A DNA stretch of 64,000 nt from Dendrobates tinctorius (GCF_039654945.1 NW_027361700.1:16306001-16370000), one strand, 5' to 3'. Shown: positions 4,687-45,469, counted from the first letter of the stretch. Program-made: numbers and translations. The notes: generated from the letters alone by a model not told the origin.

Positions 4687-7600
4687 TTTCTCGTTCGCCT
4701 TATTGGGGGACACAGAGACCATGGGTGTATGCTGCTGCCACTAGGAGGCTGACACTATGCACAAAAAAAGGTTAGCTCCTCCTCCGCAGTATACACCCCA
4801 CCAACCGGCAGGAATTTCCTCAGTTTAGCTTAGTGTCAGTAGGAGGTGGACACGGGTCTTTCATTAGACCCATATCTACCTCGGTGTGCGTCGTTCCTTT
4901 TCAGGGTCCCGGAGGGATACAGAGTGAATAGTCACATCTGTAGTCCCACAAGAGACTATGAGTACGGCGTGTACTGCCACCCCGTATCCTCATAGCTCTC
5001 CGCAGCAGGACCAGGAGCTTTGCACAGGTGCGTGCCAGCTATACGGATGGTCCTTGCCCCCCGCCTCCCACCCACTCGCCTACCAGAGCCTGTCGGTTGG
5101 ACGAGGCGCGGACACTGGGAAAATAGACTCAGACAGCGTTGGATTTACAAGGTACCTTTATTGAAGACACCACTGGAGGATTCTTCGGAGCGGCACAGGG
5201 CAGTGCCGCAGGGTCCTCAGCTGCCTGCGCCTCCCGGCAGCCGCCGCACTTTCTGTTGCGCCACATGCCAGGCCCCGGCTGCGGCGCGGGCCTTGTCCCC
5301 CCCAAGGTGTCTCAGTCCCTAGTGGCCGTTCTTGATAAGTTGCCCCTGGACACTTCCGCAAGGTCCAGCAGGTCGCAAGGGGTTCCATCTGAGCCAGCCA
5401 GCAGAAGCCGCAAAAGACCCAGGCATCTCCGGCCGGAATCCTCTCCTGGCCTGGTCTCTCCACATTGTCCTTCCCAGCAGTCGCCTTCCCGTGCCTCCTC
5501 ACCCGAGTCAGGTGAAGCGTTCTCGGATGTGTCATCCGAAGAGATTTTATAGCTGGATTCGGACCAGGACGCAGACATGAAGGTTTCGGTACAGAACCTC
5601 ATTGCTGCGATTAACCACACCTTCGAAATACAGACTCCCCTGCGAAACGCTCGGATCAGGAGGTTTCGTTCAGACGGGCAGTAACACCTTCCAGAGTCTT
5701 CACCTCCCACTCTGAGTTTGGCAAGATCCTTACCAGGGAGAGAGAGAAAATCCGACCAGATGCTTTCAAAGAGGGAAGTGTCTCGGCGTGCTCTATCCAT
5801 TTTCAAAAGAGCTCACCGACAACTGGTCGGCTTCCCCCTCTTTAGACGCTCCCGTGTCCAGACTATCTTATCAACACGGTCTTTCCGATTTCAGGTGTGA
5901 CGTCGCTAAAGGATTCTAATGGCAGAATTATAGAATCCCTAGCAAAGTCAGTATTCGAAGCGGCTGCGGCGGCGCTAAGCCCAGCCTTTGCTTCATCTTG
6001 GGTAGCAAAGGCCATAGCTACTTGGGCGGAGGATCTCCGCAAGGGCATCCTAGGTAAAGCCCAACCGGAGCAATCGGCCAAACTGGCTAACCAGATCTCC
6101 CATGCAGGGGATTATCTGCTCTCTGCCTCCTTGGATGCCGCGTCTTGCGCGGCTCAGGCGTCCAGCAACGTGATGACAATCCGGCGTACAATTTGGCTCA
6201 AGGCTTGGCAGGCGGATTTATCTTCAAAAAGTCCCTTACCAATCTGCCTTTTCAGGGAGTGCGTCTCTTTGGATCCCAGTTGGACCAGATTATTAGGGAC
6301 ACCACTGGAGGCACAAGTTCCCTTCTTCCTCAGTCCAAGCCTTGTAGGCCTCCGCTAAGGCGTCAGTTTCGGCCCTTTCGGTCTACCAGCAGAGGCCGCA
6401 GGCACGCCAGGATAGAAAGAAGGTCTCCTTCAGACCCACTCCCTCCTGGCGATCTCACTCATCCCAGGGCAGATCCTCCAGGTCCAGATCTGGTCGGTCC
6501 ACAGCAGCATGACTATCAAGAAAGTCCCGAGGGTCTTTCCCAACTGGGCGGTCGACTCCTTTTCTACAGAGACGTCTGGCTTGCCTCAGTAGAGGACGCT
6601 TGGGTCAGGGAAGTTGTATCCCCAGGATACAAGATAGTTTGTTTCTCGTTCCCGGGATCGTTTCTTCGAGTCCTTCCAAAAGACCCTGCCTTAGTCCGGG
6701 TTTGTTCGCATCCATCACCTCTCTCCTCAGTTCCGGGGTGATTTTGTCCGCTCCCAAATCAGAACGTTTCACAGGGTTTTATTCAAACCTGTTTGTAGTG
6801 TGGAAAAAAGATGGTGCAGTTCGTCCCATCCTGGATCTCAAGTTACTTAACAACAGGGTCCGATTGCGTCATTTCAGGATGGAGTCTCTTCGGTCGGTAA
6901 TCGCTTCCATGGAGGCGCAGGAGTTCATGTGTTCAATAGACATTCAAGATGCCTATCTACATGTTCCCATCTTTCCCGGGCATCAGAGATTCCTGCGTTT
7001 TGCGATTCACCAGAACCACTACCAGTTTGTTGCACTGCCGTTTCGGTCTCGCCACCGCACCCAGAGTTTTTACAAAGATCATGGCGGCGTTGATGGCCTT
7101 GTTGAGGATGAGAGGTCTCGTTCTTTTTCCTCGACGACATTCTGATCAAAGCTCCGTCTTTTCACCAGGCTCGCCAAAATCTTACCATCGTCCTCTACAC
7201 CCTGTCCAATTTTGGGTGGCTCGTCAACAAAAAGAAGTCCTGCCTTGTTCCGACACAACGTCTGGTGTTTCTGGGCCTATTGTTCGACACTCGTCGATCA
7301 ACGGTTTTTCTCCCAGAGGAGAAGATAGTTTCTCTGCAGCGAGATGTACGGTCGCTGCAGATCACACGACTTCCATCTCTCCGGACAACCATGAAAGTTC
7401 TAGGAAGGATGGTGGCGTTGACAGAAGCGATTCCCTTTGCTCAATTTCACTCCAGACCCCTCAAACAGGCCATCCTGTCTCGGTGGAACAGGTCTGTTCT
7501 TTCCCTGGATCGTCCAATTCGCCTTTCATACCAGGTCAGGCAGTCCCTCATTTGGTGGCGGACGTCACCTCTCATTGCCCTAGGACGGTCATTCCTTCTC

Positions 7601-9652
7601 ATTCACTGGCAGATTGTGACAACGGATGCCAGCCTCCTCGGCTGGGGGGGCAATATTTCGCAATCACACTGTTCAGGGTCGGTGGTCGACTAGAGACAGC
7701 TCTGCCGATCAACGTCATCGAGATACGGGCGATCTATCTGTCTCTCGTTCACTGGGAGAGACTTCTCAGGGGCCTGCCAATCCGTATTCAGACAGACTGC
7801 CACAGCGGTGGCAGATATCAACCACCAGGGGGGACACGGAGTGCCTCAGCCCTAGCGGAAGTGTCCAAAACTCTTCACTCGGCAGAGGTTTCAGTTCCAC
7901 CAATATCCGCGGTGCACATTCCCGGCATGGACAACTGGGCCGCCGATTTTCTCAGCGGCGGGAGAGTGGTCCTTACATCCGGAGGTATTTCATCAGATTT
8001 GCCGTCGTTCGGGAACTCCGGACGTTGACCTGCTGGCGTCTCGCCTCAACAGGAAAGTCCCACAGTTTGTATCCAGAGCTCGAGATCCTCTCGCCAGGGG
8101 CGCCGATGCTCTGACCATTCCTTGGTCTTAGTTCGAGCTCCCCTACCTGTTCCCTCCCCTTCCCCTTCTTCCCAAGCTGTTGAAGAAAATCAAAGCAGAA
8201 GGAAGTCCAGTCATCCTCATCGCTCCTTAATGGCCCAGAAGGTCTTGGTTCGCGGACATCGTCAACCTTCTCGCGGACTCCTCCTGGAAGGTTCCAGACA
8301 GGGCAGATCTGCGGTCTCAGCGCCCGATTTGCCACCTCAATTCTCGGCCGCTCAATTTGACGGCGTGGCTATTGAGACCAAGGTTTTGAAACGATCAGGT
8401 TATTCATACCATGATCTGGGCCAGAAAGCCTATCCATTTCGTTCCAGAAGACACTGGCCTCCCGTCCTCAGGTCAAGACTTTCCTTCAGGGAGTGGCTCA
8501 TGCGGCTCCTCCTACCGTGTGCCCGTACATCCATTGGATCTTAATCTGGTTCTCGAGGTTCTGCAAGGTCCTCCCTTTGAACCTCTCAGGGAAGTTTCCC
8601 TATCCTTTCATGGAAAGTAGCCTTCCTAGTAGCCGTCACCTCCATCCGGCGCGTGTCGGAATTGGCGGCCATTTCTTGTCGTTCCCCTTTCTTGGTGCTC
8701 CACCAGGACAAGGTAGTTCTACGGACTCCGCCTTCTTTCCTTCCTAAGGTGGTGTCCACTTTCCACCTGGATGAGGATATTGTTCTCCCGTCCTCTTGTC
8801 CGGGTCCAACTCACCCTCGGGAGCGCTCCTTGAACAAGCTGGACTTGGTCAGGGCAAAGAAGGTCTACCTATCTAGAACGACTCGTTTGAGGAAGTCAGA
8901 CTCTCTTTTCATCATTCCAGATGGGGCGCGGAAAGGTCAGCCAGCCTCCAAAGCTACTATTGCTCGCTGGATCAGGTCGGCAAATTTGGAGGCCTACCGG
9001 ATCAAGCATCGAGTGGCCCCTCAGGGAATTAGAGCTCACTCTACCCGGGCAGTGGGTGCCTCCTGGGTGGTGCGCCACAGAGCTTCCGCGCTGCAACTTT
9101 GCAAAGCTGCAACCTGGTCATCTGTTCACACGTTTGTGACATTCTAGAAGGTCCACACCTACGCTTCGGCGGAGGCCAGCCTAGGTAGAAGGATCCTGCA
9201 GGCAGCGGTGGTGAGTCCACTGGCCTGATGGAAGTTTGTTTCCCACCCCAGAGACTGCTTTGGGACGTCCCATGGTCTCTGTGTCCCCCAATAAGGCGAA
9301 CGAGAAAACAGGATTTTTGGGTTGCTTACCGTAAAATCTGTTTCTCGGAGCCTTCATTGGGGGACACAGCACCCTCCCATGTTCTACAACTCCTGTTCTT
9401 ATGTTGTTGGTTATGTACAGTTGAGTTGTCTGTTCTGTTTCAATCTATTCTGTTACTTCTCCTACTGCTTTCTCACTAACTGAGGAAATTCCTGCCGGTT
9501 GGTGGGGTGTATACTGCGGAGGAGGAGCTAACCTTTTTTTGTGCATAGTGTCAGCCTCCTAGTGGCAGCAGCATACACCCATGGTCTCTGTGTCCCCCAA
9601 TGAAAGCTCCGAGAAACAGATTTTACGGTAAGCAACCCAAAAATCCTGTTTT
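4687..9652 (+). mobile_element. DIRS1-type tyrosine-recombinase retrotransposon, copy 1 (subfamily A; degenerate, internally deleted)
   Basis: ITRs about 4702-4825 and 9478-9601; internal complementary region (ICR) 9269-9369; TTT at both ends; frameshifted gag, RT/RNase H and YR (HSTR motif); catalytic Tyr codon reads TAG at 9145-9147. Confidence 0.95.
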
Positions 9653-17790: not shown

Positions 17791-19452
17791 TTATTGTTAA
17801 AATTGATCTGTTCCACATGTTGTATAAAGGTCTTAAAGGGTTATTACAAAAAAATCTAGTTATCCCCTTTCCATAGGACCCCAAGCTCTCCCTAGATTGG
17901 GGCTTTACAGCCTTGTACTGAATGGAGCTGAGGTGCACATGTGAGGCCTCCACTAAATTCATGTCTATAGGACTAGCTGAGCGCTGCACTTAACAATTCC
18001 ATAAACAAAAGATGAAGCAGAAGCCACGCATGCACACCTCTGCTCCATTTTTTGTCTATGAGATTGCCAATTGCAACGCTCAGCTAGTCCTATAGACATG
18101 AATTTAGAGGAGGCCTCACACACGCACCTGTGGCCCACTGAGAATGGGGCTGCAGGGGGGTTCTTGGGGTTATAGAACATGAATTCAGGACTGCCGAGAG
18201 TGTCCTGGCGGATGAAGCTCTGGATCTCTTGCAATCAGCAAGTTATTCCTTATTCCACAGGGGATAACTCATTTACTCTGTCGTCTCATTGGGGGACACA
18301 GAACCATGGGTGTTATGCTGCTGTCCACTAGGAGGCGACACTATGCATAATCTGAAAAAGATTAACTTTGGCTCCTCCTCTGCAGTATACACCCCTGGAC
18401 GGCGTCAGCCTTCTCCAGTTTTTGCTTAGTGTCGCAAGGAGGCACACCTTTTTTCTTTTTTTCCTTTTGTCGGAACAGATGAAGAAAAGTGGGTCTCCAG
18501 CGAGACTCCCGGCATGGCTCCTTCCTTGGCCCCCTTTTTAGGGGTGCCCAGTTGAAGTGGAGATGGCGGTTCCCCATGTCGCTCCTTCCCCAGTCCCTCG
18601 GGTACTGGTCCGAAGTTGAGACCCCCCCCCTCCTTCCCCAACCCCCTTCAGGGTCTGGGTTGAGGTTGAGGCAAGGATGAAGACCCCCTGACGGTGACAG
18701 ACGCACCCTCCCTAATCCCCCGCAGGGGGCATTAGGTTGAGACGCCGCAGGTAGGGTCGGAGTACAGACAGCATTCTGCACCAGGGACCCCAGCCCAGCT
18801 GTGGGATCCTGCTGGGGCCGGGGGAGGGTGCAGGCAGACGTGGCACAGCAGAGACAGGGCTTTCTGCTCCCCTGCCTCTGCAGCAGCAGTGGCTCCATGG
18901 TGCTCCAGGGACCCCCCACACAGGTACCGCTAGCCCTGCTGCCCCCACCGCTAGCCAGTCGCCCATTCCGGGGGGGTCCGGTGCAAATCCGACCCCCTCC
19001 CGGACTACCGCGCCGCTCTGGAGCCCTCCTGGGCATCAGGCCTCTAATCTAGACCGCGGCTTCGGCCTAGCCGAAGCCGCCGCCTTTTCCCCGCCCCCCG
19101 GATGACTAAAATGACACGCTGGAGTGTCATAGAAGGGGCGGATTGAGGCAGAAAGGGCGCTTTTTTACAAGCCCAGCGCGCCCTTTTCAGCTCTCCGCCC
19201 CCTCCTCCCTCTCCTCAGAGTCCCGGTGGCCATTTTTTTTGGATGAGATCCAGGAGAGGAGCATCACAGCGGTCTCCGTGGGGCACAGAACTAGTATCTG
19301 TCGGTTCTGGACCTAGGGGCACACCAGTGGGGTAAGCTCACAGCTGGGTTTTCATTACTCAGCTGTGAATCCATACTTCCTAGAAGGCTCTCTGTGGGTT
19401 CCCTCTGCGTAGCCACCCCTGTACGATCCCTGATAGCCAGCCTCTGTGCACT

Positions 19453-21023
19453 ATGCCGGGCTCAAGGAAGAGAACCAGGCAGGAATGTTTCTATGCATTC
19501 TGCACAGCCTGCAAAGCCACGCTCCCTAGTGGTAGCACGTATCCGCACTGCCGGGACTGCATCCAGAACTCTGGGTCAGAACCCCAGGGAGTCCCTACTG
19601 ACGCTTCAGTGTCACAGGCCACGCCGGAATGGGCAACTCAGATGTCACAGTCTATGACACAGTCCATAGACAACCTAACTGCCGCATTGCTGCCACCTCT
19701 GCAGAGTCGGGCCCCGGCTATGGACGTTACACAGCAAACGGACAGCTTGTCTCAGGAACATGCTGCTTCCGACTCTCACAGACATAAGCGGACCCACAGG
19801 TCTCGATCACCTGAGTCGGCCTATAGCACAAGGTCGTCCCCCCCAGGGAGAGACAGCGTCATTCCAGGTCTCCTAGGCAGTCCCCTGTCACAGACAGACA
19901 GTGCAATTTACCACAGAGATCCCCCACCACAGAAGACCCCTGCCCCAGGTCGCCCTCCAGGGATCACCTTAGTGAGGCACAGGATTCGGAGGGCATCTGT
20001 GACTCCGACTCAGATAACGAAACGGAGAGGTCCGTGGTACCTTCTCCCCCTAGCAATACAGCGCTAGTTGAGGACATAATCTCTGCAATTCATCGGGTGC
20101 TAAAAATTCCAGAGTCGGCCCCGGAAGTCCCAGAACATAGGATTTGCTTCGAAAGTGTTCAGAAACCACCTAAGGTCTTCCCTAATCACCATGAGTTTGA
20201 GGAAATACTTACCAAACAGTTTGCGCAGCCTGAGAAAAAATTTGCTAATCGCAAATATTTGGAAGCGAAGTACCCCTTCCCACAGACAGACACCAAACAA
20301 TGGACAGATCCACCTGAAGTGGAACCCCCGGTTTCTAGGCTAGCAGCGCAGACCTTACTCTCTCTGCCAGATAGCTCAACCCTCAGGGACGCAGCAGACC
20401 GGCAAGTAGAACGCATGGCTCGTTCTATTTTCGAAGCAGCAGGCGCCTCTCTGGGCCCTGCGTTTGCTTCAGTTTGGGCGGCCAAGGCCATCCTGGCTTG
20501 GGCCAAAAAACTACAGGAGGGTCTTCAAGCTTCAAATCCCAAGCTCTCGGACCAAGCGGTCCAGATAGCAGTGGTAGCAGACTACATGCTTCATGCAGCC
20601 CTGGATTCCGCAAGAGGTGTAGCGGGAATAGCATCAAACGCCATCACGATCCGACGCATCCTCTGGCTGCGAGAATGGAAAGCGGATGCGGCCTCAAAGA
20701 AGTCCCTCACGCGACTTCCGTATCTTACTGGAAGACTTTTCGGCGAAAAGCTGGACACAATGATAGCCAATGCCACTGGGGGTAAGAGTACCTCTCTCCC
20801 TCAACTAAAACCGAAACGCACGTTTAAACGAAGAAACCAGACGCGATTCCGATCCTTTCGGAATTCCTCGGGCTGGTCCGTCTCGCGCCCAGCGCAAAAC
20901 CGTAACCGCTCTCCACGCAGGGACAACCCACGGTCGCAGCAGCGACCGGACAGGTCTTGGCAGTCGAAAGCAGGCCAAGCGAAACCCAAGGGAGGAAAAC
21001 CTCAGAACTTCGCTTCATCATGA
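19453..21023 (+). pseudogene. DIRS copy 2 ORF1 (gag-like), one frameshift near 19900-20060
   Basis: ORFs 19453-20067 and 20034-21023; N-terminal CxxC-12-CxxC; homologous to ORF1 of copies 1 and 3 (RRxxWLxxWxAD, LFGxxLD). Confidence 0.85.
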
Positions 21024-22917
21024 CTCAGGAACTCCGGAAGACACCCCACCAGTAGGCGGCCGACTTTTACTCTTCCTGCAAGTCTGGCTGCCTATTACAG
21101 AAGACAGGTGGGTCAGGGAAATAGTGTCTTCCGGATACAAGATACAGTTCACTTCCGCTCCACCGAACCGGTTTTTCCTTTCTATTCCTCCAACACCACC
21201 AGACAAGGCTCGTGCTTTCCACCAAGCGGTCTCCTCTCTCCTTCAAGCAGGAGTTGTGGTGCCGGTTCCCGCGAACGAGAGATTCCGAGGGTTCTACTCA
21301 AATCTGTTCGTAGTCCCCAAGAAAGGAGGCAGCGTCCGACCCATACTGGACCTAAAACAGCTCAACAATTACATACGGGTCCGTCACTTCCGCATGGAGT
21401 CCCTCCGGTCCATCATTGCATCCATGGAGCAGGGAGAATACCTTGCCTCCATAGACATACAGGATGCGTATCTGCACATACCAATTGCCCCCGCCCACCA
21501 AAGGTTTCTCAGGTTTGCGGTCAACCAAAACCACTACCAGTTTGTCGCCCTTCCGTTCAGACTCGCCACGGCTCCAAGAACGTTCACCAAAGTCATGGCG
21601 GCCACCATGGACGTTCTGCACTCAAGAGGCATTCTAGTCATCCCGTACCTGGACGACCTCCTCATCAAGTCTCCCACTTTCAAAGATTGCGAGGTCAGTG
21701 TCTCAATCACAATAGACACACTGAGTCGCCTGGGATGGCTAGTCAACCTACAGAAATCGTCGACTATCCCAAGTCAGACTCTAACATTCCTGGGAATGTT
21801 ATTCGACACCTCCAGGGGCCTGGTGCTCCTTCCCAAGGACAAGACACTGGCCATCCGTCTGGGAGTTCATACACTCCTTCGCAGTCCTCCTCGATCTCTC
21901 CGGTTTGCCATGAGAGTCCTCGGCCGGATGGCAGCAGCAATAGAGGCAGTGCCATTTGCCCAGTTTCACCTCAGGGTCCTTCAACTAGCCATACTCAGCT
22001 CTTGGGACAGGAATCCCTTCTCCCTCGACAGGGAGTTCAGGTTGACGTCGTCAACCAGGAGGTCCCTGCATTGGTGGCTCAATCCAACCTCGCTTACACG
22101 AGGAAAGCCCTTTCTCTCAGGACAATGGAAGATCCTGACTACCGATGCAAGCCTGACAGGCTGGGGGGCAGTGCACCTACATCACAGGGCACAAGGCAAG
22201 TGGTCACCGAGGGAAGTGACATTGCCCATCAATATTCTGGAAATCAGGGCCATCCTCTTGGCACTGAGAGCCTTTCATCACTTGCTTGCAGCCTCGCACA
22301 TACGGATACAGTCGGACAATGCCACGGCTGTGGCATACGTGAACCACCAAGGCGGGACCCGCAGCGCCCAGGCGATGAGAGAAGTGGCACATATCCTCCG
22401 CTGGGCGGAAAACACGAGGTCGGTACTTTCTGCGGTCCTCATTCCGGGTGTAGAAAACTGGGAAGCCTACTTCCTCAGCAGGCAAGGAATGGACTCGGGG
22501 GAGTGGTCTCTCCATCCCGAGATTTTTTACCAGATCTGTCAATGCTGGGGAACCCCGGAGGTGGACCTAATGGCATTCCATCTCAATACCAAGGTCCCCA
22601 ATTTCATGGCCAGGACACACGACCCGCGGTCGCTCGGAGCGGATGCCCTGGTCCAGGACTGGTCCCAGTTCCGACTCCTGTACATTTTTCCACCCCTCCC
22701 CCTAATCTCCAGGGTCGTGAGGAAGATCAAGCAAGAGGGAGTTCCAACCATCCTCATCGCTCCAGACTGGCCCAGACGTACATGGTACGCCGACATCGTT
22801 CAACTTACAGCAGACGTCCCCTGGCGTCGTCACGACCTTCTGTCTCAAGGTCCGTTCTTCCATCAGAATTCAGGGGCTCTCAATTTGACGGCATGGCCCT
22901 TGAAACCTGGATTCTAA
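21022..22917 (+). CDS. DIRS copy 2 reverse transcriptase / RNase H / methyltransferase-like ORF (no initiator AUG)
   Basis: GGRL..W..GYKI, RPILDL, IDIQDAY, YLDD (21646-21657), TDASLTGWG, INILE, SDN, DLMA, YIFPP. Confidence 0.92.
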   Translation, partial: DSGTPEDTPPVGGRLLLFLQVWLPITEDRWVREIVSSGYKIQFTSAPPNRFFLSIPPTPPDKARAFHQAVSSLLQAGVVVPVPANERFRGFYSNLFVVPKKGGSVRPILDLKQLNNYIRVRHFRMESLRSIIASMEQGEYLASIDIQDAYLHIPIAPAHQRFLRFAVNQNHYQFVALPFRLATAPRTFTKVMAATMDVLHSRGILVIPYLDDLLIKSPTFKDCEVSVSITIDTLSRLGWLVNLQKSSTIPSQTLTFLGMLFDTSRGLVLLPKDKTLAIRLGVHTLLRSPPRSLRFAMRVLGRMAAAIEAVPFAQFHLRVLQLAILSSWDRNPFSLDREFRLTSSTRRSLHWWLNPTSLTRGKPFLSGQWKILTTDASLTGWGAVHLHHRAQGKWSPREVTLPINILEIRAILLALRAFHHLLAASHIRIQSDNATAVAYVNHQGGTRSAQAMREVAHILRWAENTRSVLSAVLIPGVENWEAYFLSRQGMDSGEWSLHPEIFYQICQCWGTPEVDLMAFHLNTKVPNFMARTHDPRSLGADALVQDWSQFRLLYIFPPLPLISRVVRKIKQEGVPTILIAPDWPRRTWYADIVQLTADVPWRRHDLLSQGPFFHQNSGALNLTAWPLKPGF

Positions 22918-23936
22918 CCCAGGCAGGTTTTTCACCGGCAGTCATTGCGACTATGATCAGGGCAAGGAAGCCTGCCTCCGCCAAGATCTATTATCGTACC
23001 TGGAGAGCTTTCTTTTCTTGGTGCGAATCTCATGGACAAGTCCAACTCCCTTATTCCCTCCCGAAGGTACTAGGTTTTCTTCAATCGGGTCTAGACGACA
23101 AGCTATCCTTAGGCTCGCTTAATAGTCAGGTGTCGGCGCTTTCAGTCCTTTTTCAAAAGTGCATTGCTACTAAACCGCAAGTAAGGACTTTCATCCAGGG
23201 AGTTTCCCGATTGGTTCCTCCCTACAAACGTCCGCTGGATACATGGGACCTCAATCTGGTCCTGACAGCATTGCAAGCTCCACCCTTTGAACCTCTTAGA
23301 GGAGTTCCACTCTCAATTCTGTCTCAGAAAGTGGTTTTTCTAGTGGCGATCACCTCGTTACGCAGAGTGTCGGAATTGTCAGCACTTTCCTGCAGACGGC
23401 CTTTCCTAGCCTTTCATCAGGACAAGGTGGTTCTCCGCACGGTACCATCCTTCCTTCCGAAGGTTGTGTCCAACTTTCACCTCAATGAGGAGATTTCACT
23501 GCCATCCCTTTGCCCGGTTCCGGTTCATAGAGTGGAGAAGGCTCTGCATACGCTTGACCTCGTCAGAGCATTGCGGATTTACGTGTCCAGGACTGCACCT
23601 TTCCGGAAGTCTGATTCCCTCTTCATTCTTCCAGAAGGTAGTCGCAAGGGACTGCCGGCTTCCAAGGCTACCCTTGCCAGGTGGATCAAGTCCACTATAC
23701 ATGAGACCTACTGACTTAACAGTTCCCCTCTTCCGGCCGGTATCACGGCACACTCTACACGGGCAGTAGGGGCCTCCTGGGCCATTCGGCACCAGGCTTC
23801 GGCACAACAAGTGTATAAGGTGGCCACTTGGACTTGCCTACACACGTTTACGAAACACTACAGTCTTCATACCCAGTCCTCAGCGGATGCGAGCCTGGGT
23901 AGACTGGTTCTGCAGGCGGCAGTGCCCCAAATTTAG
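21024..23936 (+). pseudogene. DIRS copy 2 tyrosine recombinase ORF overlapping the whole RT ORF; single premature TGA at 23712
   Basis: Open from directly after the gag stop to 23711; RRVSEL, HSTR, FTKHY motifs; the TGA aligns with Arg in copies 1 and 3 (likely CpG decay). Confidence 0.9.
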
Positions 23937-24669
23937 GGACCTGCTAGCACAATATTCGTCCATTGCTTCCCACCCAGGGACTGCTTTGGGACGTCCCATG
24001 GTTCTGTGTCCCCCAATGAGGCGACAGAGTAAAGGAGATTTTTGTGTACTCACCGTAAAATCTCTTTCTCTTAGCCTCTAATTGGGGGACACAGCTCCCA
24101 CCCTGTTGCCCTTATGGGCCGTTGTTTACGGTTGAGTTCTCATATTGTTCTTTGAGCTCGTACATAGTAGCCTTCTTACAGGCATGGTTATGTTATTTGG
24201 TTATGTTCCTCCTAATGCTTTTGCACAAAACTGGAGAAGGCTGACGCCGTCCAGGGGTGTATACTGCAGAGGAGGAGCCAAAGTTAATCTTTTTCAGATT
24301 ATGCATAGTGTCGCCTCCTAGTGGACAGCAGCATAACACCCATGGTTCTGTGTCCCCCAATTAGAGGCTAAGAGAAAGAGATTTTACGGTGAGTACACAA
24401 AAATCTCCTTTTCTAAGTCCTCTTACCTTGCAATGTTGCTGGTTTGGTAGCCACACATCATCTGACAGATTTTCTTAGCTTTCTCTTTATCCATATTCCA
24501 CTCCTAATGTCAAGGATATCATTTATTGAATTTACCCTTGCTGCATTTTTTATATTTCCAACATTTCTGTTACGCTGTCAAGACACCTCTAGTAAATGTC
24601 CAGTGTTAATCATCAGTTTATTGAAAGGGAGTCTGTCAGCAGTGTTAACCCCTAAAAATTATATGTATA

Positions 24670-39371: not shown

Positions 39372-42300
39372 AAAACAGGATTTTTTGGGTTGCTTACCGT
39401 AAAATCTGTTTCTCGGAGCCTTCATTGGGGGACACAGAGACCATGGGTGTATGCTGCTGCCACTAGGAGGCTGACACTATGCACAAAAAAGGTTAGCTCC
39501 TCCTCTGCCGTATACACCCCACCGACCGGCAGGAAATTCCTCAGTTAGTGAGAAAGCAGTAGGAGAAGTAACGGAATAGATTGAAAACAGAACGAACAAC
39601 TCAACTGTAACCAATCGACAAACATAAGAACAGGAGTTGTAGAACATGGGAGGGTGCTGTGTCCCCCAATGAAGGCTCCGAGAAACAGATTTTACGGTAA
39701 GCAACCCAAAAAATCCTGTTTTCTCGTTCGCCTTATTGGGGGACACAGAGACCATGGGACGTCCCAAAGCAGTCTCTGGGGTGGGAAATAAACTTCCATC
39801 AGGCCAGTGGACTCACCACCGCGGCCTGCAGAATCCTTCTACCTAGGCTGGCGTCCGCCGAAGCGTAGGTGTGGACCCTGTAGAATTTCACAAAAGTGTG
39901 AACCGAAGACCCGTTGCAGCTTTGCAAAGCTGCAGCGCGGAAGCTCTGTGGCGCACCGCCCAGGAGGCACCCACCGCCCGGGTAGAGTGCGCTCTGATCC
40001 CTGAAGGAGCTGCACGATGCTTGACCCGGTATGCCTCCAAAATTGCCGATCTGATCCAGCGAGCAATAGTGGCCTTTGAGGCTGGGTGACCTTTCCTTGC
40101 ACCGTCTGGAATGATAAACAGAGAGTCTGACTTCCGCAAGGAAGATGTCCTGGCTAGATAGACTCTCAATGCCCTGACCAGGTCCAGCTTGTTCAAGGAT
40201 CGCTCCAGAGGAAGAGCTGGGCTCGGGCAGAAGGATGGCAGAACAATGTCCTCATTGAGGTGAAACGAAGATACCACCTTCGGAAGTAAAGAGGGCGGAG
40301 GCCGCAGAACTACCTTGTCCTGATGAAGTACCAAAAAGGGAGAGCGGCAAGAAAGGGCCGCTAGTTCTGACACACGTCGGATGGAAGTAATGGCCACCAG
40401 AAAGGCCACCTTCCAAAGAAAGGAGGGCAAGGGAAACATCCCTGAGAGGTTCAAAAGGAGGACCTTGCAGAACCCCAAGAACGAAATTAAGATCCCAAGG
40501 ATCCACGGGCGCTCGGTACGGAGGAACTGTGTGAGCCACACCCTGAAGAAAGGTTTTGACCTGGGGCCGGGAGGCCAGCGTCTTCTGAAATAAAATGGAC
40601 AGTGCCGAAACTTGACCCTTCAAGGAACTGAGAGCAAGCCCCGCATCCAGCCCTGTCTGAAGAAACGCCAGAACAGAAGGAAGCGAAAAAACCATGGCCG
40701 CGATGTCATTGGCCTCACACCAGGAGAAATAGGCTTTCCAAGTACGGTAATAGATCTTGGAAGAGGAAGGCTTTCTGGCGCGGATCATGGTATGAATCAC
40801 TCGGTCAGAGAATCCTGCCCGTTTCAAAACCTCGGTCTCAACAGCCACGCCGTTAAATTGAGCGACCGAGAATTGGGGTGGCAAATCAGGCCTTGCGACA
40901 GCAGATCTGCCCTGTCGGGAAGCTTCCAGGGGGCGTCCGCGAGAAGGTTGACAATGTCCGCGAACCAAGACCTTCTGGGCCAATTCGGGGCGATGAGGAC
41001 GACTGGAATCCCTTCTGCCTTGATTTTCTTCAACAGCTTGGGAAGAAGAGGCAGGGGAGGGAACAGGTAGGGGAGCTCGAACTGTGACCAAGGAACGGCC
41101 AGAGCGTCGGCGCCCACTGCCAGGGGGTCCCGAGACCTGGACACGAATTGTGGTACCTTCCTTTTGAGGCGAGACGCCATGAGGTCTACGTCCGGGGTTC
41201 CCCACCGACGGCAGAGCAGATGAAACACATCCGGATGTAGGGACCATTCCCCTGCCGCGAGACCCTCGCGGCTTAGAAAATCGGCGGCCCAGTTGTCCAC
41301 GCCGGGAATGTGAACCGCGGAAATTGTTGGAACAAAGGTCTCTGCCCATTGAAGAATTCTGGACACTTCCGCCAGAGCTGAGACACTCCGTGTCCCCCCT
41401 TGTCGGATGATATACGCCACCGCTGTGGCATTGTCTGTTTGAATCCTGACAGGCAGGCCCTTGAGGCGCCGTTCCCAGTGGACGAGAGCCAGAAGGATCG
41501 CTCGTATCTCTAGGACATTGATCTGCAGAGCTGATTCCTGAGTCGACCATCGACCCTGAACAGTGATTGCGGAACACTGCACCCCAGCCGATGAGGCTGG
41601 CGTCCTTTGTGCCAATCTGGGAAGAAAGGACCGCCCCGAGAGAATGAGGGGAGACGTCAACCACCAGTTGAGAGACCGCTTGATCCGGCATGAAAGACGA
41701 ACCGGACGATCCAGAGACAGAGCCGACCTGTTCCACCTGGACAAAATGGCCTGCTGGAGGGGCCTGGCGTGAAACTGGGCAAAGGGAACTGCCTCTATTG
41801 CTGCCACCATCTTCCCCAGAATCCTCATGGCTGTCCTGAGAGTTGAAAACCGTGCGATCTGTAGTGATCGGACGCCCTGCTGCAGGGAAAGAATCTTGTC
41901 TTGTGGGAGAAATACCCTTGACCGACGAGTGTCGAAAAGAAGGCCCAGAAACACAAGGAGTTGAGTAGGGATCAGACAGGACTTTTTCCGGTTGACGATC
42001 CACCCAAAACTGGACAGGGTGTCTAGAACGATCGCCACACTTAGGCGGGCCTGATGAAAGGAGGGAGCCTTGATCAGATTATCGTCGAGATACAGAAAAA
42101 GAACAAGACCTCTGATCCTCAACAAGGCCATCAACGCTGCCATAATCTTCGTGAAGACCCTGGGAGCGGTGGCGAGCCCAAAAGAGAGCGCGACGAACTG
42201 ATAATGTTCGTGGTGAATCGCAAACCACAGGAACTTCGGATGTCCGGGAAATATGGGCACGTGTAGATAGGCATCTTGGATGTCTATGGAACACATGAAT

Positions 42301-45282
42301 TCCTGCTCCTTCATGGAGGCAATCACCGAGCGAACCGACTCCATCCGGAAGTGGCGGAGGCGAACTCTCTTGTTGAGTAACTTGAGATCCAAGATGGGTC
42401 GAACCGCCCCGTCCTTTTTCGGCACCACAAACAGGTTTGAATAAAACCCTGTGAATCGTTCCGATTCAGGAACGAGCACAATCACCCCAGAGCTGAGGAG
42501 AGAGGCGATGGCCGAACCGAACCCCGGGATCAAGGCAGGATCCCGTGGCGGACGGGATGGAAGAAGCGATCCCGTGGAAGAGAAACGAACTCTATTTTGT
42601 ATCCTGTCGATACAACCTCTCTGACCCAAGCGTCCTCTACTGAGGCGAACCAGACGTCGCTGAAGAAAAGAAGTCGACCTCCCAATTGGAAGGGACCCAC
42701 GGAAGACCGATGATAGTCATGCGGACGTAGACCGTCCAGATCTAGATCTGGGTGGTCTTCCCTGGGAAGAGTGGGACCGCCAGGACGGAGTGGGCCTGAA
42801 GGAGACCTTCTTTCTTTCCTGACGTGCTTGTGGCCTTTGCTGGTTGGAAGGGTTTTCCGCCGCATTGAAACGGCGGAAAGACCGAAAGGGACGGAACTGA
42901 CGCCTTGGAGGAGGTCTGCGAGGCTTGGATTGGGGGAGAAGAGAACTCGTACCTCCGGTAGCGTCCTTAATAATCTGGTCCAATTGGGACCCAAAGAGAC
43001 GCACTCCTTGAAAAGGCAGATTAGTCAGACTTTTTAGAGGACAAGTCCGCCTGCCAGGCCTTGAGCCAAATTGTACGTCGGATTGGCACGATGTTGCTTG
43101 ACGCCTGAACCGCGCAAGATGCGGCATCCAAGGAAGCAGAAAGCAGATAATCCCCCGCATGGGAAATCTGATTGGCGAGATCGGCCAAATGCTCCGATTG
43201 TGCGTTATCCAGAATGCCCTGCCGAAGGTCCTCTGCCCAAGCGGATATAGCCTTTGCTGCCCAAGATGAAGCAAAGACTGGACATACCGCCGCAGATGCC
43301 GCCTCGAAGGCAGACTTTGCTAGGGATTCTATGATTCTGTCATTAGAATCTTTTAGAGACGCTACACCCGACAGCAGAAGAACAGTATTATTAGAGAGTC
43401 TGGATACGGGAGGGTCCACTGAAGGAGAAGCGGCCCAGTTGTCCGTGAGCTCTTTAGCGAACGGATACAGCACGCTGAGACGCTTTTCTCTTTGAAAGCG
43501 TCTAGTCGGATCTTCCCTTTCCTTGGTAAAAATCTTCCCAAACTCGGAATGAAAGGGAAACACCCTGGAAGGTGTTTCCGCCCGTCTGAACGAAACCTCC
43601 TGATCTGAGGATTTCGCAGGGGCGTCAGTGATGTCGAAGGTATGGTGAATCGCGGCAATGAGGTTCTGCACCGTAACCTTCATGTTCGCATCCTGAACCG
43701 AATCCAGCTCTAAGGCCCCTTCAGATTCCGAAAGCGCTTCACCTGACTCGGGAGAGGAGGCCCGAGAGGGAGACTGCTGGGGAGTATGGGGTGAGGTAGG
43801 GCGAGGAGAGGACTCCGCCTGGAGATCCTGCCTGGGTCTCTTGCGACTGACACTGGCTGGCTCAGATGGGACGTCCTGGGACGTGCTAGATCCCGCAGAA
43901 GCTCCCAAGGGCAACTTATCCAGAACGGCTACTAGGGACTGAGACACCTTGGTGAGGTCTGCCACCGACTGTGATAGGGAGGAGGCCCAACCCGGCAAGG
44001 GGGGCTCACTCACCCCTGGGGCTATGGATGGCTCCTGAGCGGCGTCGGGCTGGATTGGATTGCTACAGTCCAGGCAGAGGGGAGAGGACTGACCCCTGAG
44101 GTAGTGCCGGAAGGTTGGGGGACAGAGGGCGGAGAAGGGTCAGTCTGCCGTGCAGAGCTACTCACGGTCCGGTGTCCCCAAAAGCGATGCTGCTCGACCT
44201 GTCCGGGGATGCAGATCAGGGAGAAGTCTGGCTGGCCGTCCCAAAGAGGCAAAAAGCTGCTTGCAGAAACTGCTCAGGGGCTGGGGAGCGTCTCCAGCTG
44301 CGTCCGGCTGGCAGGCTGTGAAGATGGCGCCTGCCTGTAGAAAAGCGTGGGTCCCGGGGAAGGGGAAGGGCGGAGCTCCTCGCAGGGTTAATAATTGCTG
44401 CCCTCTAGCCATAATATGCTGGGCAGGAGAGGGAAAGGCGGGGGGAGGGCCTGGGGAGAGCGGGAGAGAAGCCCGCTTAGAAGAAAGGGGCGGGGGGGGT
44501 AGGCCCGAACACAAGCCGGGGCCTAAATTAGTTGCGGCGGCCGCCTGTCAGCAGGGGGTCGGCGCGGAAGACGCGACGCAACACCGGGCCGCGTCCCTGC
44601 CCAGAACTGCCCGACTCCAGCGCTACCCCTGCCGAGATGGAAAAAAGGGGGGGAAGCGCAGAACGAGGCCCGTGAAGACCCGGGGCCTGCATGGATGCGG
44701 TGACCGTGGGGGGATGCGGGGCGTGCAGGGACCCAAACGTGGTCCCCCTGGCGACCGCTCCAAGAGAAAACGCCGAGGGAAGACTGACATACTCACCCAG
44801 GCAGGGGGCCTTACAATAAAGGTACCTGAAAATCCCACGCTGTCTGTCTCTATGAAATCCGCGCCTCATCCAACCTTCAGGCTCTGGTAGGCGAGAGGGT
44901 GGGAGGCGGGGGGCAAGGACCGTCCGTGCGGCTGGCACGCACCTGTGTGAGGCTCCTGGTCCTGCTCCGGAGACCTATGAGGATACGGGGTGGCAGTACA
45001 CGGCGTACTCATAGTCTCTTTGTGGGAGTACGGATGTGACTGTTCACTCCGTATCCCTCCGGAACCTGCAAAGAAACGACGCACACTGAGGTAGATATGG
45101 GTCTAATAAAAGACCCGTGTCCACCTCCTACTGACACTAAGCTAAACTGAGGAATTTCCTGCCGGTCGGTGGGGTGTATACGGCGGAGGAGGAGCTAACC
45201 TTTTTTGTGCATAGTGTCAGCCTCCTAGTGGCAGCAGCATACACCCATGGTCTCTGTGTCCCCCAATAAGGCGAACGAGAAA
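39372..45282 (-). mobile_element. DIRS1-type retrotransposon, copy 3 (subfamily A; full length, several frameshifts)
   Basis: Same termini as copy 1 in reverse orientation; ICR 39657-39758; gag about 44150-42717, RT about 42716-40824 (YLDD), YR to about 39799. Confidence 0.96.
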
Positions 45283-45469
45283 TAGATATTTGTAATAGTC
45301 CATTCAAGATCATCAGTATCCTCAAATATAATATGTGAATATAATGCATGAAATTCTCAAAATTCGTGTAGTTGGTCATTATTCATCTGCTGTGTCCACT
45401 GTAGTTAATGACATGCAGAGCATGAACAATGGGTTATGACCACTACATTTTTCATTAATTTCTTTTAAG

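What the first reader, a model, noticed from the sequence alone, without database searches (positions are those of the whole stretch)
21015..21030. One UGA, three frames: candidate readthrough plus +1 frameshift switch at the DIRS gag stop, conserved in all three copies
Seen: gag ends TCA-TGA-CTC in copy 2 (stop 21021), GCA-TGA-CTA in copy 1 (6510) and GCA-TGA-CTA in copy 3 (42719-42717, minus strand). In all three the gag frame reopens at once. In copy 2 it runs stop-free for 896 codons (21024-23711) under the entire RT ORF and into the tyrosine recombinase. The RT frame is +1 (CAT-GAC) in all three. In copy 2 its first AUG after the gag stop is FR-M-ESL, downstream of conserved RT motifs (GGRL, GYKI, RPILDL). 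Known: overlap of YR and RT ORFs is described for DIRS1 elements; UGA-CUA is a readthrough context; antizyme shifts +1 at UCC-UGA. Inference: slow termination at this stop could yield Gag, Gag-linker-YR (readthrough) and Gag-Pol (+1 shift) from one mRNA. I know of no demonstration of this. Alternative: splicing to the acceptor-like TTTTCT(A/T)CAG about 60 nt downstream in copies 1 and 3, or internal initiation.
Basis: partly seen in the sequence, partly recalled or inferred. Interest (0 to 1): 0.9.

Follow-up and report, generated by a model that had tools for sequence, protein, structure and literature searches.

The report
Leaky gag stop in DIRS retrotransposons
The UGA that ends gag in these frog DIRS retrotransposons looks like a programmed leaky stop that lets ribosomes read on, underneath the whole reverse-transcriptase gene, into the tyrosine recombinase. 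The reverse transcriptase is more likely reached by a separate +1 slip about 165 bases upstream than at that same UGA.

Summary
All three DIRS copies end gag at xCA-UGA-CUx, the gag frame reopens at once, and RT lies in the +1 frame with no usable AUG.

I compared 68 DIRS1-like lineages that differ by at least 20% in DNA.
- The gag stop is UGA (51) or UAG (17) and never UAA. Pol and recombinase stops are UAA in 30 of 114 cases.
- The stop is usually followed by C or G. UGA-CUN occurs 23 times.
- It is always in frame with a roughly 1000-codon ORF. That ORF runs stop-free under pol (0 stops observed, about 23 expected) into a Cre-like recombinase.

This supports programmed readthrough giving Gag-linker-YR.

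The "+1 shift at the same UGA" part is not supported for these copies. An in-frame UUU_CGG, the influenza PA-X/amalgavirus +1 motif, sits 165-168 nt upstream of the stop in copies 2 and 3, and at the homologous place in copy 1. In-frame UUU_CGN is nine-fold enriched and phase-specific in gag/pol overlaps.

I found no splice joint at the site. All evidence is computational. First-reader notes on two other pieces of this genome proposed the same readthrough idea. The three copies here are themselves broken.

The parts
18268..24414 (+). DIRS1-like retrotransposon, copy 2 (near-complete but broken)
   Evidence: The inverted terminal repeats and the internal complementary region were found by self-BLAST. 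gag, RT/RH/MT and YR domains are present.
18284..18422 (+). Left inverted terminal repeat of copy 2
   Evidence: It is 139 bp and 99.3% identical in inverted orientation to 24227-24365.
24227..24365 (+). Right inverted terminal repeat of copy 2
   Evidence: It pairs with the left repeat. Internal complementary pieces lie at 23995-24094.
19453..21023 (+). gag ORF of copy 2 (LAP2alpha-like), with a one-base frame break near 19837
   Evidence: Pfam LAP2alpha matches at 8.9e-12. The ATG is at 19453 in frame 1 and the remainder is in frame 0. Other family copies differ in length at 19837.
20853..20862 (+). Candidate +1 frameshift site UCC_UUU_CGG_A in the gag frame, 165 nt before the gag stop
   Evidence: It is in frame and lies inside the gag/pol overlap. 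The motif class is nine-fold enriched and phase-specific across lineages. Gag-frame similarity between the two families fades here, and pol-frame similarity begins here.
20809..21023 (+). gag/pol overlap (pol frame open upstream of the gag stop)
   Evidence: define it. Its length is what gag's hydrophilic tail gives by itself, with no extra selection.
21018..21029 (+). gag stop and context UCA-UGA-CUC-AGG: candidate programmed readthrough site
   Evidence: An A at -1 and a C at +4 fit the lineage-wide bias.
21049..22917 (+). pol (RT, RNase H, methyltransferase-like) in the +1 frame, conserved from VGGRL onward
   Evidence: Pfam RVT_1 matches at 2.8e-18 and RT_RNaseH at 2.2e-6. Dam matches at 1e-3, below its cut-off. 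The nearest full-length relatives, at about 60-67% identity, are dendrobatid frog proteins.
21024..22929 (+). X region: gag-frame ORF overprinted on pol, Pro/Ser/Gly/Arg-rich, with no Pfam match
   Evidence: It has 0 stops against 17 expected. Pfam finds no family.
22930..23936 (+). Tyrosine recombinase in the gag frame, with a premature stop at 23712-23714 in this copy
   Evidence: The R, H-x-x-R and Y motifs are read directly. A profile of 44 homologous regions hits Cre recombinase at 1.4e-7.
21049..21092 (+). Predicted hairpin about 28 nt after the stop (weak support)
   Evidence: The 108-nt fold has a z-score of only -1.17. Related families have G-C hairpins 6-10 nt after the UGA.
6510..6512 (+). 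gag stop of copy 1 (GCA-UGA-CUA)
6367..6381 (+). Two UUU_CGG motifs of copy 1, homologous to the copy 2 and copy 3 site; now out of phase with its stop because of later indels
42717..42719 (-). gag stop of copy 3 (GCA-UGA-CUA)
42882..42887 (-). In-frame UUU_CGG of copy 3, 168 nt before its gag stop

Best explanation
One genomic mRNA of these DIRS1-like elements yields three products through two separate recoding sites.

1. Most ribosomes terminate at the gag UGA (21021 in copy 2) and make Gag.
2. A fraction read the UGA as a sense codon. They continue in the gag frame through a roughly 640-codon, disordered-looking linker overprinted on pol, and on into the tyrosine recombinase. The product is Gag-X-YR.
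3. A smaller fraction slip +1 at an in-frame UUU_CGG in the basic tail of gag (20856-20861; P-site tRNA-Phe moves from UUU to UUC while CGG waits in the A site). They then translate a roughly 55-codon transframe stretch and pol, giving Gag-Pol.

Shown here: the anatomy, the frame relations, the selection against stops, and the stop and motif statistics. Inferred: that ribosomes actually read through and slip, and at what rates.
For: **Readthrough**
- In 77 of 88 loci, gag, a single stop and a roughly 1000-codon ORF ending in YR share one frame. No locus has gag in the dead third frame.
- Among 68 lineages below 80% nt identity, the stop is TGA 51, TAG 17 and TAA 0. Pol and YR stops are TAA in 30 of 114 cases (Fisher 1.7e-7).
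- The base at +4 is C after 34 of 51 TGA, and G or C after all 17 TAG. TGA-CTN occurs 23 times. The base at -1 is A in 44% of lineages.
- In amphibian-type families Ser-Ala-stop is kept, with a synonymous Ser codon but an invariant GCA-TGA. GCA_UGA_CUAG is the strongest human readthrough signal, and its GCA P-site codon matters (PMC9841425).
- The X frame has 0 stops in 67 of 67 lineages. About 23.5 are expected, and the minimum across 6700 shuffles was 5.
- There is no ATG in the X frame for 237 codons in copy 2. The Met at the start of YR is not conserved.

**+1 site**
- Pol has no ATG before its conserved domain in copy 2 or in about half of the loci.
- TTTCG in the overlap falls in phase 0 31 times, against 3 and 3 in the other phases. 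Its density is 1.74/kb against 0.19/kb in the gag body.
- Phe-Arg pairs use TTT-CGN in 31 of 46 cases, against 30% expected (P = 3e-7).
- The motif lies 147-168 nt before the stop in copies 2 and 3, L084, L086, L089 and Xenopus L001.
- UUU_CGN is an established +1 motif (PMC5052127).

**RNA**
- Contigs in RNA-labelled runs cross the site colinearly, and no joint lies near it.
Against: - Nothing was measured. Every step of translation is inferred.
- UUU_CGN occurs in only 26 of 68 lineages.
- Phe-Arg is also a recurring peptide motif of gag tails (FRxFR), so part of the enrichment may act at the protein level.
- PA-X-type shifting is only about 1-2% efficient in reticulocyte lysate.
- Copy 2 has UGA-CUC rather than the optimal CUAG, and no convincing 3' structure (z = -1.17).
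- A 640-residue overprinted linker with no protease to release YR is an odd product.
- Four scattered lineages put gag in frame with pol instead, so the frame logic is not universal.
- Most comparison loci are metagenome contigs of unknown hosts, chosen by pol similarity. The type-A definition required a long downstream ORF, which makes the X-frame test partly circular.
- The three copies in this window are dead.
Confidence: 0.5

Rival explanations
1. One reading: the single UGA is a three-way switch. Slow termination there gives Gag, Gag-X-YR by readthrough, and Gag-Pol by an antizyme-like +1 shift at xCA-UGA-C.
For: - Pol's conserved N-terminus begins as little as 13-16 nt after the stop in some lineages.
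- The length of the gag/pol overlap needs no selection, so nothing demands an upstream shift site.
- Readthrough and +1 shifting do compete at weak stops in reporter assays.
- 18 of the 42 lineages without UUU_CGN end gag in UUU, UCC or CCC plus a stop.
Against: - In the three copies here the P-site codon is UCA or GCA, which cannot re-pair in the +1 frame.
- The last sense codon is not conserved across lineages.
- A canonical, in-frame, positionally conserved UUU_CGG lies 165-168 nt upstream in copies 2 and 3, with homologous motifs in copy 1.
- No lineage carrying UUU_CGN has a shift-prone last codon (0 of 26).
- Pol-frame similarity between the two families starts at the UUU_CGG, not at the stop.
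Confidence: 0.12
2. There is no recoding. Pol and YR are made from spliced or subgenomic RNAs, or by internal or non-AUG initiation, and the in-frame open gag-to-YR arrangement is an inherited accident.
For: - DIRS expression has not been dissected in the papers I could search.
- About half of the lineages have an ATG in the X frame 8-47 codons after the stop, or an ATG in the pol frame within the overlap.
- Assembled contigs cannot exclude rare spliced forms.
Against: - The X frame is kept free of stops over about 620-690 codons in every lineage. A downstream start or a splice would not require that.
- UAA is avoided, and the C or G bias at +4 applies specifically to the gag stop.
- gag is never found in the third frame.
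- The suggested acceptor would remove conserved GGRL codons.
- No joint near the site was seen in four runs.
Confidence: 0.13
3. X-YR is reached by termination-reinitiation after gag rather than by decoding the stop. The product would then be a free X-YR protein and not a Gag fusion.
For: - An AUG overlaps the stop (A-UGA) in the frog families.
- Many lineages have an X-frame ATG about 24 codons downstream, created by a codon ending in A before the conserved Trp codon of pol.
Against: - The overlapping AUG is in the third frame and opens only 11-28 codons.
- Copy 2 has no X-frame ATG for 237 codons.
- Reinitiation would not require gag and X-YR to share a frame, and it would not explain the avoidance of UAA.
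Confidence: 0.07

Closest known systems
Gammaretrovirus (MuLV) gag-pol readthrough and other viral leaky stops (types I-III: UAG-CAR-YYA, UGA-CGG/CUA, UAG/UGA-G plus 3' structure)
   Same: A single leaky stop ends gag and is followed in frame by an enzyme ORF. UAA is avoided. The 3' contexts are C or G. Several DIRS families have G-C hairpins 6-10 nt downstream.
   Different: Here the in-frame downstream ORF is usually not pol. It is a roughly 640-codon linker overprinted on pol, followed by a tyrosine recombinase. There is no protease. The viral motif classes are recalled from my own knowledge and were not tested here.
Human OPRL1-type readthrough signal GCA_UGA_CUAG (Loughran et al., PMC9841425)
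   Same: Copies 1 and 3 carry GCA_UGA_CUA. GCA-UGA is invariant in six amphibian-type families.
   Different: The base at +7 is U, not G. Copy 2 has UCA_UGA_CUC. Efficiency in frog cells is unknown.
Influenza A PA-X and amalgavirus +1 frameshift motif UCC_UUU_CGU / UUU_CGN (PMC5052127; Firth 2012 and Jagger 2012 as cited there)
   Same: An in-frame UUU_CGN lies inside an ORF1/ORF2 overlap, with ORF2 in the +1 frame and without a start codon. Copy 2 even has the UCC_UUU_CGG form.
   Different: The host element is a retrotransposon. The motif is present in only about 38% of the lineages sampled. It has not been tested.
Antizyme (OAZ1) UCC_UGA +1 frameshift at a stop codon
   Same: Nine DIRS lineages end gag in UCC plus a stop, with pol in the +1 frame.
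   Different: That is not the case for the copies in this window (UCA and GCA). No antizyme-like pseudoknot or polyamine link is shown. In DIRS the 0 frame is also open after the stop.
Ty1/Ty3 +1 frameshifted Gag-Pol
   Same: A Gag-Pol fusion made by a +1 shift in a Ty3/gypsy-related RT lineage.
   Different: The Ty heptamers are not enriched: CTT-AGG occurs twice in the overlap and twice in the control, and GCG-AGT never.
The 'long ORF overlap' of pol and YR described for DIRS1-like elements (Piednoel et al. 2011, PMC3266345)
   Same: It is the same overlap. That paper reports it in half of its 28 annotated elements and states that the catalytic domain lies in the non-overlapping 3' end.
   Different: That paper gives no expression mechanism. 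It does not note that the YR ORF is in frame with gag behind a single non-UAA stop.

Membership tests
DIRS1-like tyrosine-recombinase retrotransposon | Inverted terminal repeats plus an internal complementary region | tested here: met
   The 139-bp repeats are 99.3% identical. Internal pieces at 23995-24094 are complementary to both ends.
DIRS1-like tyrosine-recombinase retrotransposon | gag, RT/RNase H/methyltransferase-like pol, and a tyrosine recombinase in place of an integrase | tested here: met
   Pfam finds LAP2alpha-like gag, RVT_1 and RT_RNaseH, and Dam below its cut-off. The YR motifs are read directly. A YR profile hits Cre at 1.4e-7.
Programmed stop-codon readthrough | The stop identity and its immediate context are biased toward leaky signals and conserved across relatives | tested here: met
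   TAA occurs in 0 of 68 lineages, against 30 of 114 at control stops. TGA-C occurs in 34 of 51. TAG is followed by G or C in 17 of 17. GCA-TGA is invariant in amphibian families.
Programmed stop-codon readthrough | The downstream in-frame ORF is kept open and encodes a conserved function | tested here: met
   The X frame has 0 stops against about 23.5 expected in 67 lineages. YR is in the gag frame.
Programmed stop-codon readthrough | A 3' stimulatory RNA structure | tested here: inconclusive
   The mean z-score is -1.46 downstream of the stop, against -0.71 for a control region. Hairpins are clear in L082, L083, L086, L089 and L001, but weak in the window's copies.
Programmed stop-codon readthrough | A measured readthrough product | not testable with these tools
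   This needs reporters, ribosome profiling or mass spectrometry.
UUU_CGN +1 programmed frameshifting (PA-X/amalgavirus type) | UUU_CGN in the upstream frame, inside an overlap with a +1 ORF that lacks its own start | tested here: met
   Copy 2 has it at 20856-20861 and copy 3 at 42887-42882. The pol frame has no ATG between 20809 and 21394.
UUU_CGN +1 programmed frameshifting (PA-X/amalgavirus type) | The motif is conserved and enriched among relatives beyond what coding explains | tested here: inconclusive
   It is strongly phase-specific (31/3/3) and nine-fold enriched, with codon bias at P = 3e-7. It is nevertheless present in only 26 of 68 lineages.
UUU_CGN +1 programmed frameshifting (PA-X/amalgavirus type) | A demonstrated transframe protein | not testable with these tools
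   No proteomic or reporter data are available.
Antizyme-type +1 frameshift at a stop codon | A shift-prone P-site codon (UCC) next to UGA, plus a 3' pseudoknot | tested here: not met
   The window's copies have UCA or GCA before the UGA. No strong 3' structure is predicted. The criterion is met by sequence in other lineages.

The most novel reading that the evidence does not exclude
This reading concerns the DIRS lineages that lack an upstream UUU_CGN and end gag with UUU, UCC or CCC directly before UGA or UAG. There are 18 of them among the 68 sampled, for example L005, L007, L032, L034 and L041. In these lineages the same stop codon may serve as a natural three-way switch: termination gives Gag, readthrough gives Gag-X-YR, and a +1 slip gives Gag-Pol, with both non-terminating products essential. 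More broadly, the whole DIRS1-like superfamily may express its two enzymes as alternative Gag fusions from about 1.9 kb of fully dual-coded sequence.
Probability: 0.25. Interest if true: 0.9.

Novelty: new variant of a known kind. Interest (0 to 1): 0.75.

Why it matters
How DIRS elements translate pol and the recombinase has been left open in the literature I could search. Only the "long ORF overlap" is described there.

If these inferences hold, a whole order of eukaryotic retrotransposons uses two classical viral recoding devices on one mRNA: a leaky stop and a PA-X-type +1 slip. Two different Gag fusions would result. The recombinase would be reached only by translating about 640 codons overprinted on the reverse transcriptase, one of the longest dual-coded stretches in eukaryotic elements.

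The work also gives short, concrete sequences that can be tested in reporters. It explains why gene predictors mis-join gag and pol in frog genomes. It points to lineages where a single stop codon might have three productive fates.

Tried and rejected
- **Selection on the gag/pol overlap.** I first read the long overlap (median 85 codons, against 9 in the third frame) as selection for an upstream shift. I rejected this. A synonymous shuffle reproduces the length (84 against 83.5), because +1-frame stops need hydrophobic NTA or NTG codons, which the hydrophilic tail lacks.
- **YR start at AUG 22953.** I rejected YR initiation at this AUG, which lies 36 nt after the pol stop. The residue is Leu in close relatives.
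- **Splicing.** No joint near 21021 was seen in four runs. Those runs are Logan contigs, so rare isoforms are not excluded.
- **Ty1/Ty3 heptamers.** They are not enriched.
- **Canonical -1 slippery heptamers.** I found none convincing in the four lineages where gag is in frame with pol.
- **Conserved 3' structure in the window's copies.** It is not significant.
- **Pfam on the YR and X regions.** No hits. A profile search against PDB was needed to confirm the recombinase.
- **DNA for Pseudophryne and Ranitomeya models.** It could not be fetched because the files were too large.
- **Goodwin & Poulter 2001.** The paper is not held, so I cannot fully exclude an earlier remark on the gag-YR frame relation.
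- **Gene models that fuse gag and pol (P0016, P0017, P0020).** The one I could check on DNA, P0020 at Xenopus locus L001, comes from a decayed copy with an indel, not from evidence of a fused ORF. I had no DNA for P0016 or P0017.
Full report
**What is at the site.** The window holds three DIRS1-like retrotransposon copies.
- Copy 2 spans about 18268-24414 on the plus strand. Its 139-bp inverted terminal repeats are 99.3% identical, and it has an internal complementary region.
- Copy 1 (about 4687-9652, plus strand) and copy 3 (about 39372-45290, minus strand) belong to one family, 79-91% identical to each other. They are only about 66% identical to copy 2.
- Copy 2 encodes a LAP2alpha-like gag, an RT/RNase H/methyltransferase-like pol, and a tyrosine recombinase (YR). 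A profile of 44 homologous regions from related elements matches Cre recombinase at E = 1.4e-7.
- The nearest protein relatives come from dendrobatid frogs (Ranitomeya, Dendrobates).

**Check of the observation.**
- TCA-TGA-CTC is at 21021, GCA-TGA-CTA at 6510, and GCA-TGA-CTA at 42719-42717. CATGACT is invariant across the three copies.
- In copy 2 the gag frame reopens immediately and runs 896 codons. Pol is +1 to gag and open from 20809 to 22917.
- The pol frame has no ATG between 20809 and 21394, which lies inside the RT domain. The gag frame has no ATG between 21024 and 21735.

Some corrections are needed.
- The 896-codon run stops at a premature stop private to this copy (23712-23714). 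Copies 1 and 3 and every laid contig have a sense codon there. The frame then continues through the H-x-x-R and Tyr residues to 23934.
- Copy 2's gag has a one-base frame break near 19837, so full gag starts at ATG 19453.
- Copies 1 and 3 carry several indels. In copy 3 one of them merges the post-stop frame with the RT frame.
- All three copies are therefore dead, and only copy 2 shows the intact layout.

**Comparison set.**
- A pattern scan of metagenome contigs with a pol alignment returned 80 DIRS1-like loci, 34-40% identical to copy 2's pol.
- Look-ups of database proteins added a Xenopus laevis copy and eight amphibian-type contigs.
- Of 88 loci with a pol N-terminus, 77 share one layout, which I call type A. 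Gag ends 13-277 nt upstream of the conserved VGGRL start of pol. Pol is +1 to gag. The gag frame reopens right after the single stop and runs about 960-1030 codons to the end of YR.
- Five loci from four lineages scattered over the pol tree have gag in frame with pol behind one stop, with X-YR in the -1 frame (type B).
- Five of the six unclassified loci are truncated or decayed. The sixth, L071, lacks the long overlap altogether.
- No locus has gag in the third, closed frame.

**Evidence that the gag stop is a programmed leaky stop.** I collapsed the type-A loci to 68 lineages below 80% nucleotide identity.
- The gag stop is TGA 51 times, TAG 17 times and TAA never. The pol and YR stops of the same elements are TAA in 30 of 114 cases (Fisher P = 1.7e-7).
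- After TGA the next base is C in 34 of 51 lineages. After TAG it is G (11) or C (6). TGA-CTN occurs 23 times. One lineage has TAG-CAA-CCA. The base before the stop is A in 44% of lineages, against 24% in the background.
- In six amphibian-type families the gag C-terminus Ser-Ala-stop is kept. The Ser codon varies synonymously but GCA-TGA is invariant.
- GCA_UGA_CUAG is the most efficient human readthrough signal, and its GCA P-site codon contributes about three-fold (PMC9841425). Copies 1 and 3 have GCA_UGA_CUA.
- The frame under pol is stop-free over about 620-690 codons in all 67 lineages tested. Synonymous shuffling of pol predicts 23.5 stops on average and never fewer than 5. The third frame behaves as expected, with 43.7 stops observed and 38.1 expected.
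- An open frame that begins exactly at the gag stop, with no ATG for hundreds of codons in many lineages, is most simply explained by ribosomes continuing through the stop.
- The linker is rich in Pro, Ser, Gly and Arg and has no family match.

**How pol is reached.** The gag/pol overlap (median 84-85 codons) looked selected at first. A synonymous shuffle of gag reproduces it (median 83.5). Stops in the +1 frame need NTA or NTG codons, which the hydrophilic tail lacks. The overlap therefore says nothing about where the shift occurs.

The last sense codon is not conserved, which argues against a single slip mechanism at the stop. A search for codon pairs enriched in the overlap instead turned up TTT-CGT.
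- TTTCG occurs 31 times in the overlaps with TTT as a gag-frame codon, against 3 and 3 in the other two phases. Its density is 1.74 per kb, against 0.19 per kb in the gag body.
- Phe-Arg dipeptides there use TTT-CGN in 31 of 46 cases, where codon usage predicts 30% (P = 3e-7).
- UUU_CGN is the +1 frameshift motif of influenza A PA-X (UCC_UUU_CGU) and of plant amalgaviruses (PMC5052127).
- Copy 2 carries UCC_UUU_CGG_A at 20853-20862, in frame and 165 nt before the UGA. Copy 3 carries CCC_UUU_CGG at 42890-42882, 168 nt before its UGA. Copy 1 has the homologous pair of UUU_CGG at 6367-6381, now out of phase because of later indels.
- L084, L086, L089 and the Xenopus copy have the motif 147-165 nt before their stops.
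- Gag-frame similarity between the two frog families ends at about this point. Pol-frame similarity starts there (38% over 116 residues).
- The gag frame still scores better than the pol frame between the motif and the stop. This is as expected if that stretch is a Gag tail and only a linker in Gag-Pol.

Only 26 of 68 lineages have an in-frame UUU_CGN.
- None of those 26 ends gag in TTT, TCC or CCC. Of the other 42 lineages, 18 do (Fisher P = 3.5e-5).
- The codon set was chosen after seeing the data, and the lineages are related. I estimate about ten independent origins, so I treat this as suggestive.
- UCC-UGA is the antizyme site, and UUU-U and CCC-U allow +1 re-pairing. In those lineages one stop may serve both readthrough and the +1 shift.
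- In the window's copies the P-site codons UCA and GCA cannot re-pair, and the upstream motif is the better candidate.

**RNA evidence.**
- One call laid the contigs of four runs of the same organism on 18400-24300 (5901 bases).
- Contigs cross the gag stop without gaps. No joint lies near 21021 or 20856. The listed joints are low-depth and scattered.
- These are assembled contigs. The runs labelled RNA are not shown to be free of DNA. This is weak evidence against splicing and no evidence for expression.

**RNA structure.**
- Sequence after the stop folds somewhat better than a control inside pol (mean z -1.46 against -0.71).
- Several amphibian-type families have 7-13-bp G-C hairpins 6-10 nt after the UGA. 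These are built from the Pro codons before VGGRL and the Val-Gly-Gly codons themselves.
- In copy 2 the only strong hairpin starts about 28 nt downstream, and the fold is not significant (z = -1.17).

**Literature.**
- The searchable papers describe three ORFs and a frequent "long ORF overlap" of pol and YR, with the catalytic domain in the non-overlapping end (PMC3266345, PMC6681497, PMC3783388).
- They give no translation mechanism. Searches for DIRS together with readthrough, frameshifting or recoding found nothing relevant.
- The founding papers by Goodwin and Poulter are not held, so priority cannot be settled here.
- First-reader notes on two other pieces of this genome proposed the same gag-YR readthrough idea. 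They are unchecked and were not used as support.

**Verdict.**
I put it at about 0.75.
- The "+1 at the same UGA" half is probably wrong for these copies, at about 0.12. A PA-X-type UUU_CGG about 165 nt upstream is the best candidate, at about 0.55.
- The combined two-site model is at about 0.5.
- Everything about actual translation is inference and needs reporters, ribosome profiling or peptides.

Noticed in passing
L015, L018/L019, L023, L081 (junctions 21-501 nt upstream of VGGRL): This is a second DIRS layout. The whole of gag is in frame with pol behind a single stop (TGA, TAG, or in one case TAA), and the X-YR frame is -1. The four lineages are scattered among type-A lineages on the pol tree, so the junction has been re-framed several times. 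No canonical -1 slippery heptamer was found.
   Followed up: partly
L082, L083, L086, L089, L001 (6-10 nt after the gag UGA): These loci have stable G-C hairpins whose 5' arm is the Pro-codon run before pol's VGGRL and whose 3' arm is the Val-Gly-Gly codons. They may be readthrough stimulators. The feature is weak or absent in the window's copies.
   Followed up: partly
window 19837 and 23712-23714 (copy 2): Copy 2 has two lesions private to it: a one-base frame break in gag and a premature stop in the recombinase. Copy 2 is therefore dead even though its terminal repeats are 99.3% identical.
   Followed up: yes
pol stop codons of 67 lineages (for example window 22915-22917): Pol ends in TAG in 39 of 67 lineages, an unusual bias. 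In most non-amphibian lineages the YR N-terminal domain starts about 106-115 nt before the pol stop, so the stop lies inside YR coding sequence.
   Followed up: no
P0017 (Pseudophryne), P0020 (Xenopus laevis, L001:6001-8906), many Ranitomeya models: Public gene models fuse DIRS gag and pol, or fuse DIRS RT to host domains. In the Xenopus case the model follows a decayed copy whose indel puts gag in the pol frame. This is annotation noise caused by the overlapping frames.
   Followed up: partly
window 21020-21055; 6509-6595; 42720-42634 (-): An ATG overlaps each gag stop (A-UGA). It lies in the third frame and opens only 11-28 codons. It is a by-product of the conserved A before the UGA.
   Followed up: yes
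L071: This is the one DIRS1-like locus in the set without the long pol/YR overlap. Its YR lies after pol in a frame full of upstream stops. It shows that the overlap is not universal, as the literature says.
   Followed up: no
window 22827 (copy 2): Some contigs in two of the four runs carry a nine-base insertion here relative to copy 2. This is an in-frame length polymorphism within the pol/X overlap of the family.
   Followed up: no
gag tails of many lineages (for example window 20844-20861): The basic gag tails carry repeated Phe-Arg units (FRxFR) and Arg-Gly repeats. The Phe residues are almost the only hydrophobic residues in the tail.
   Followed up: partly
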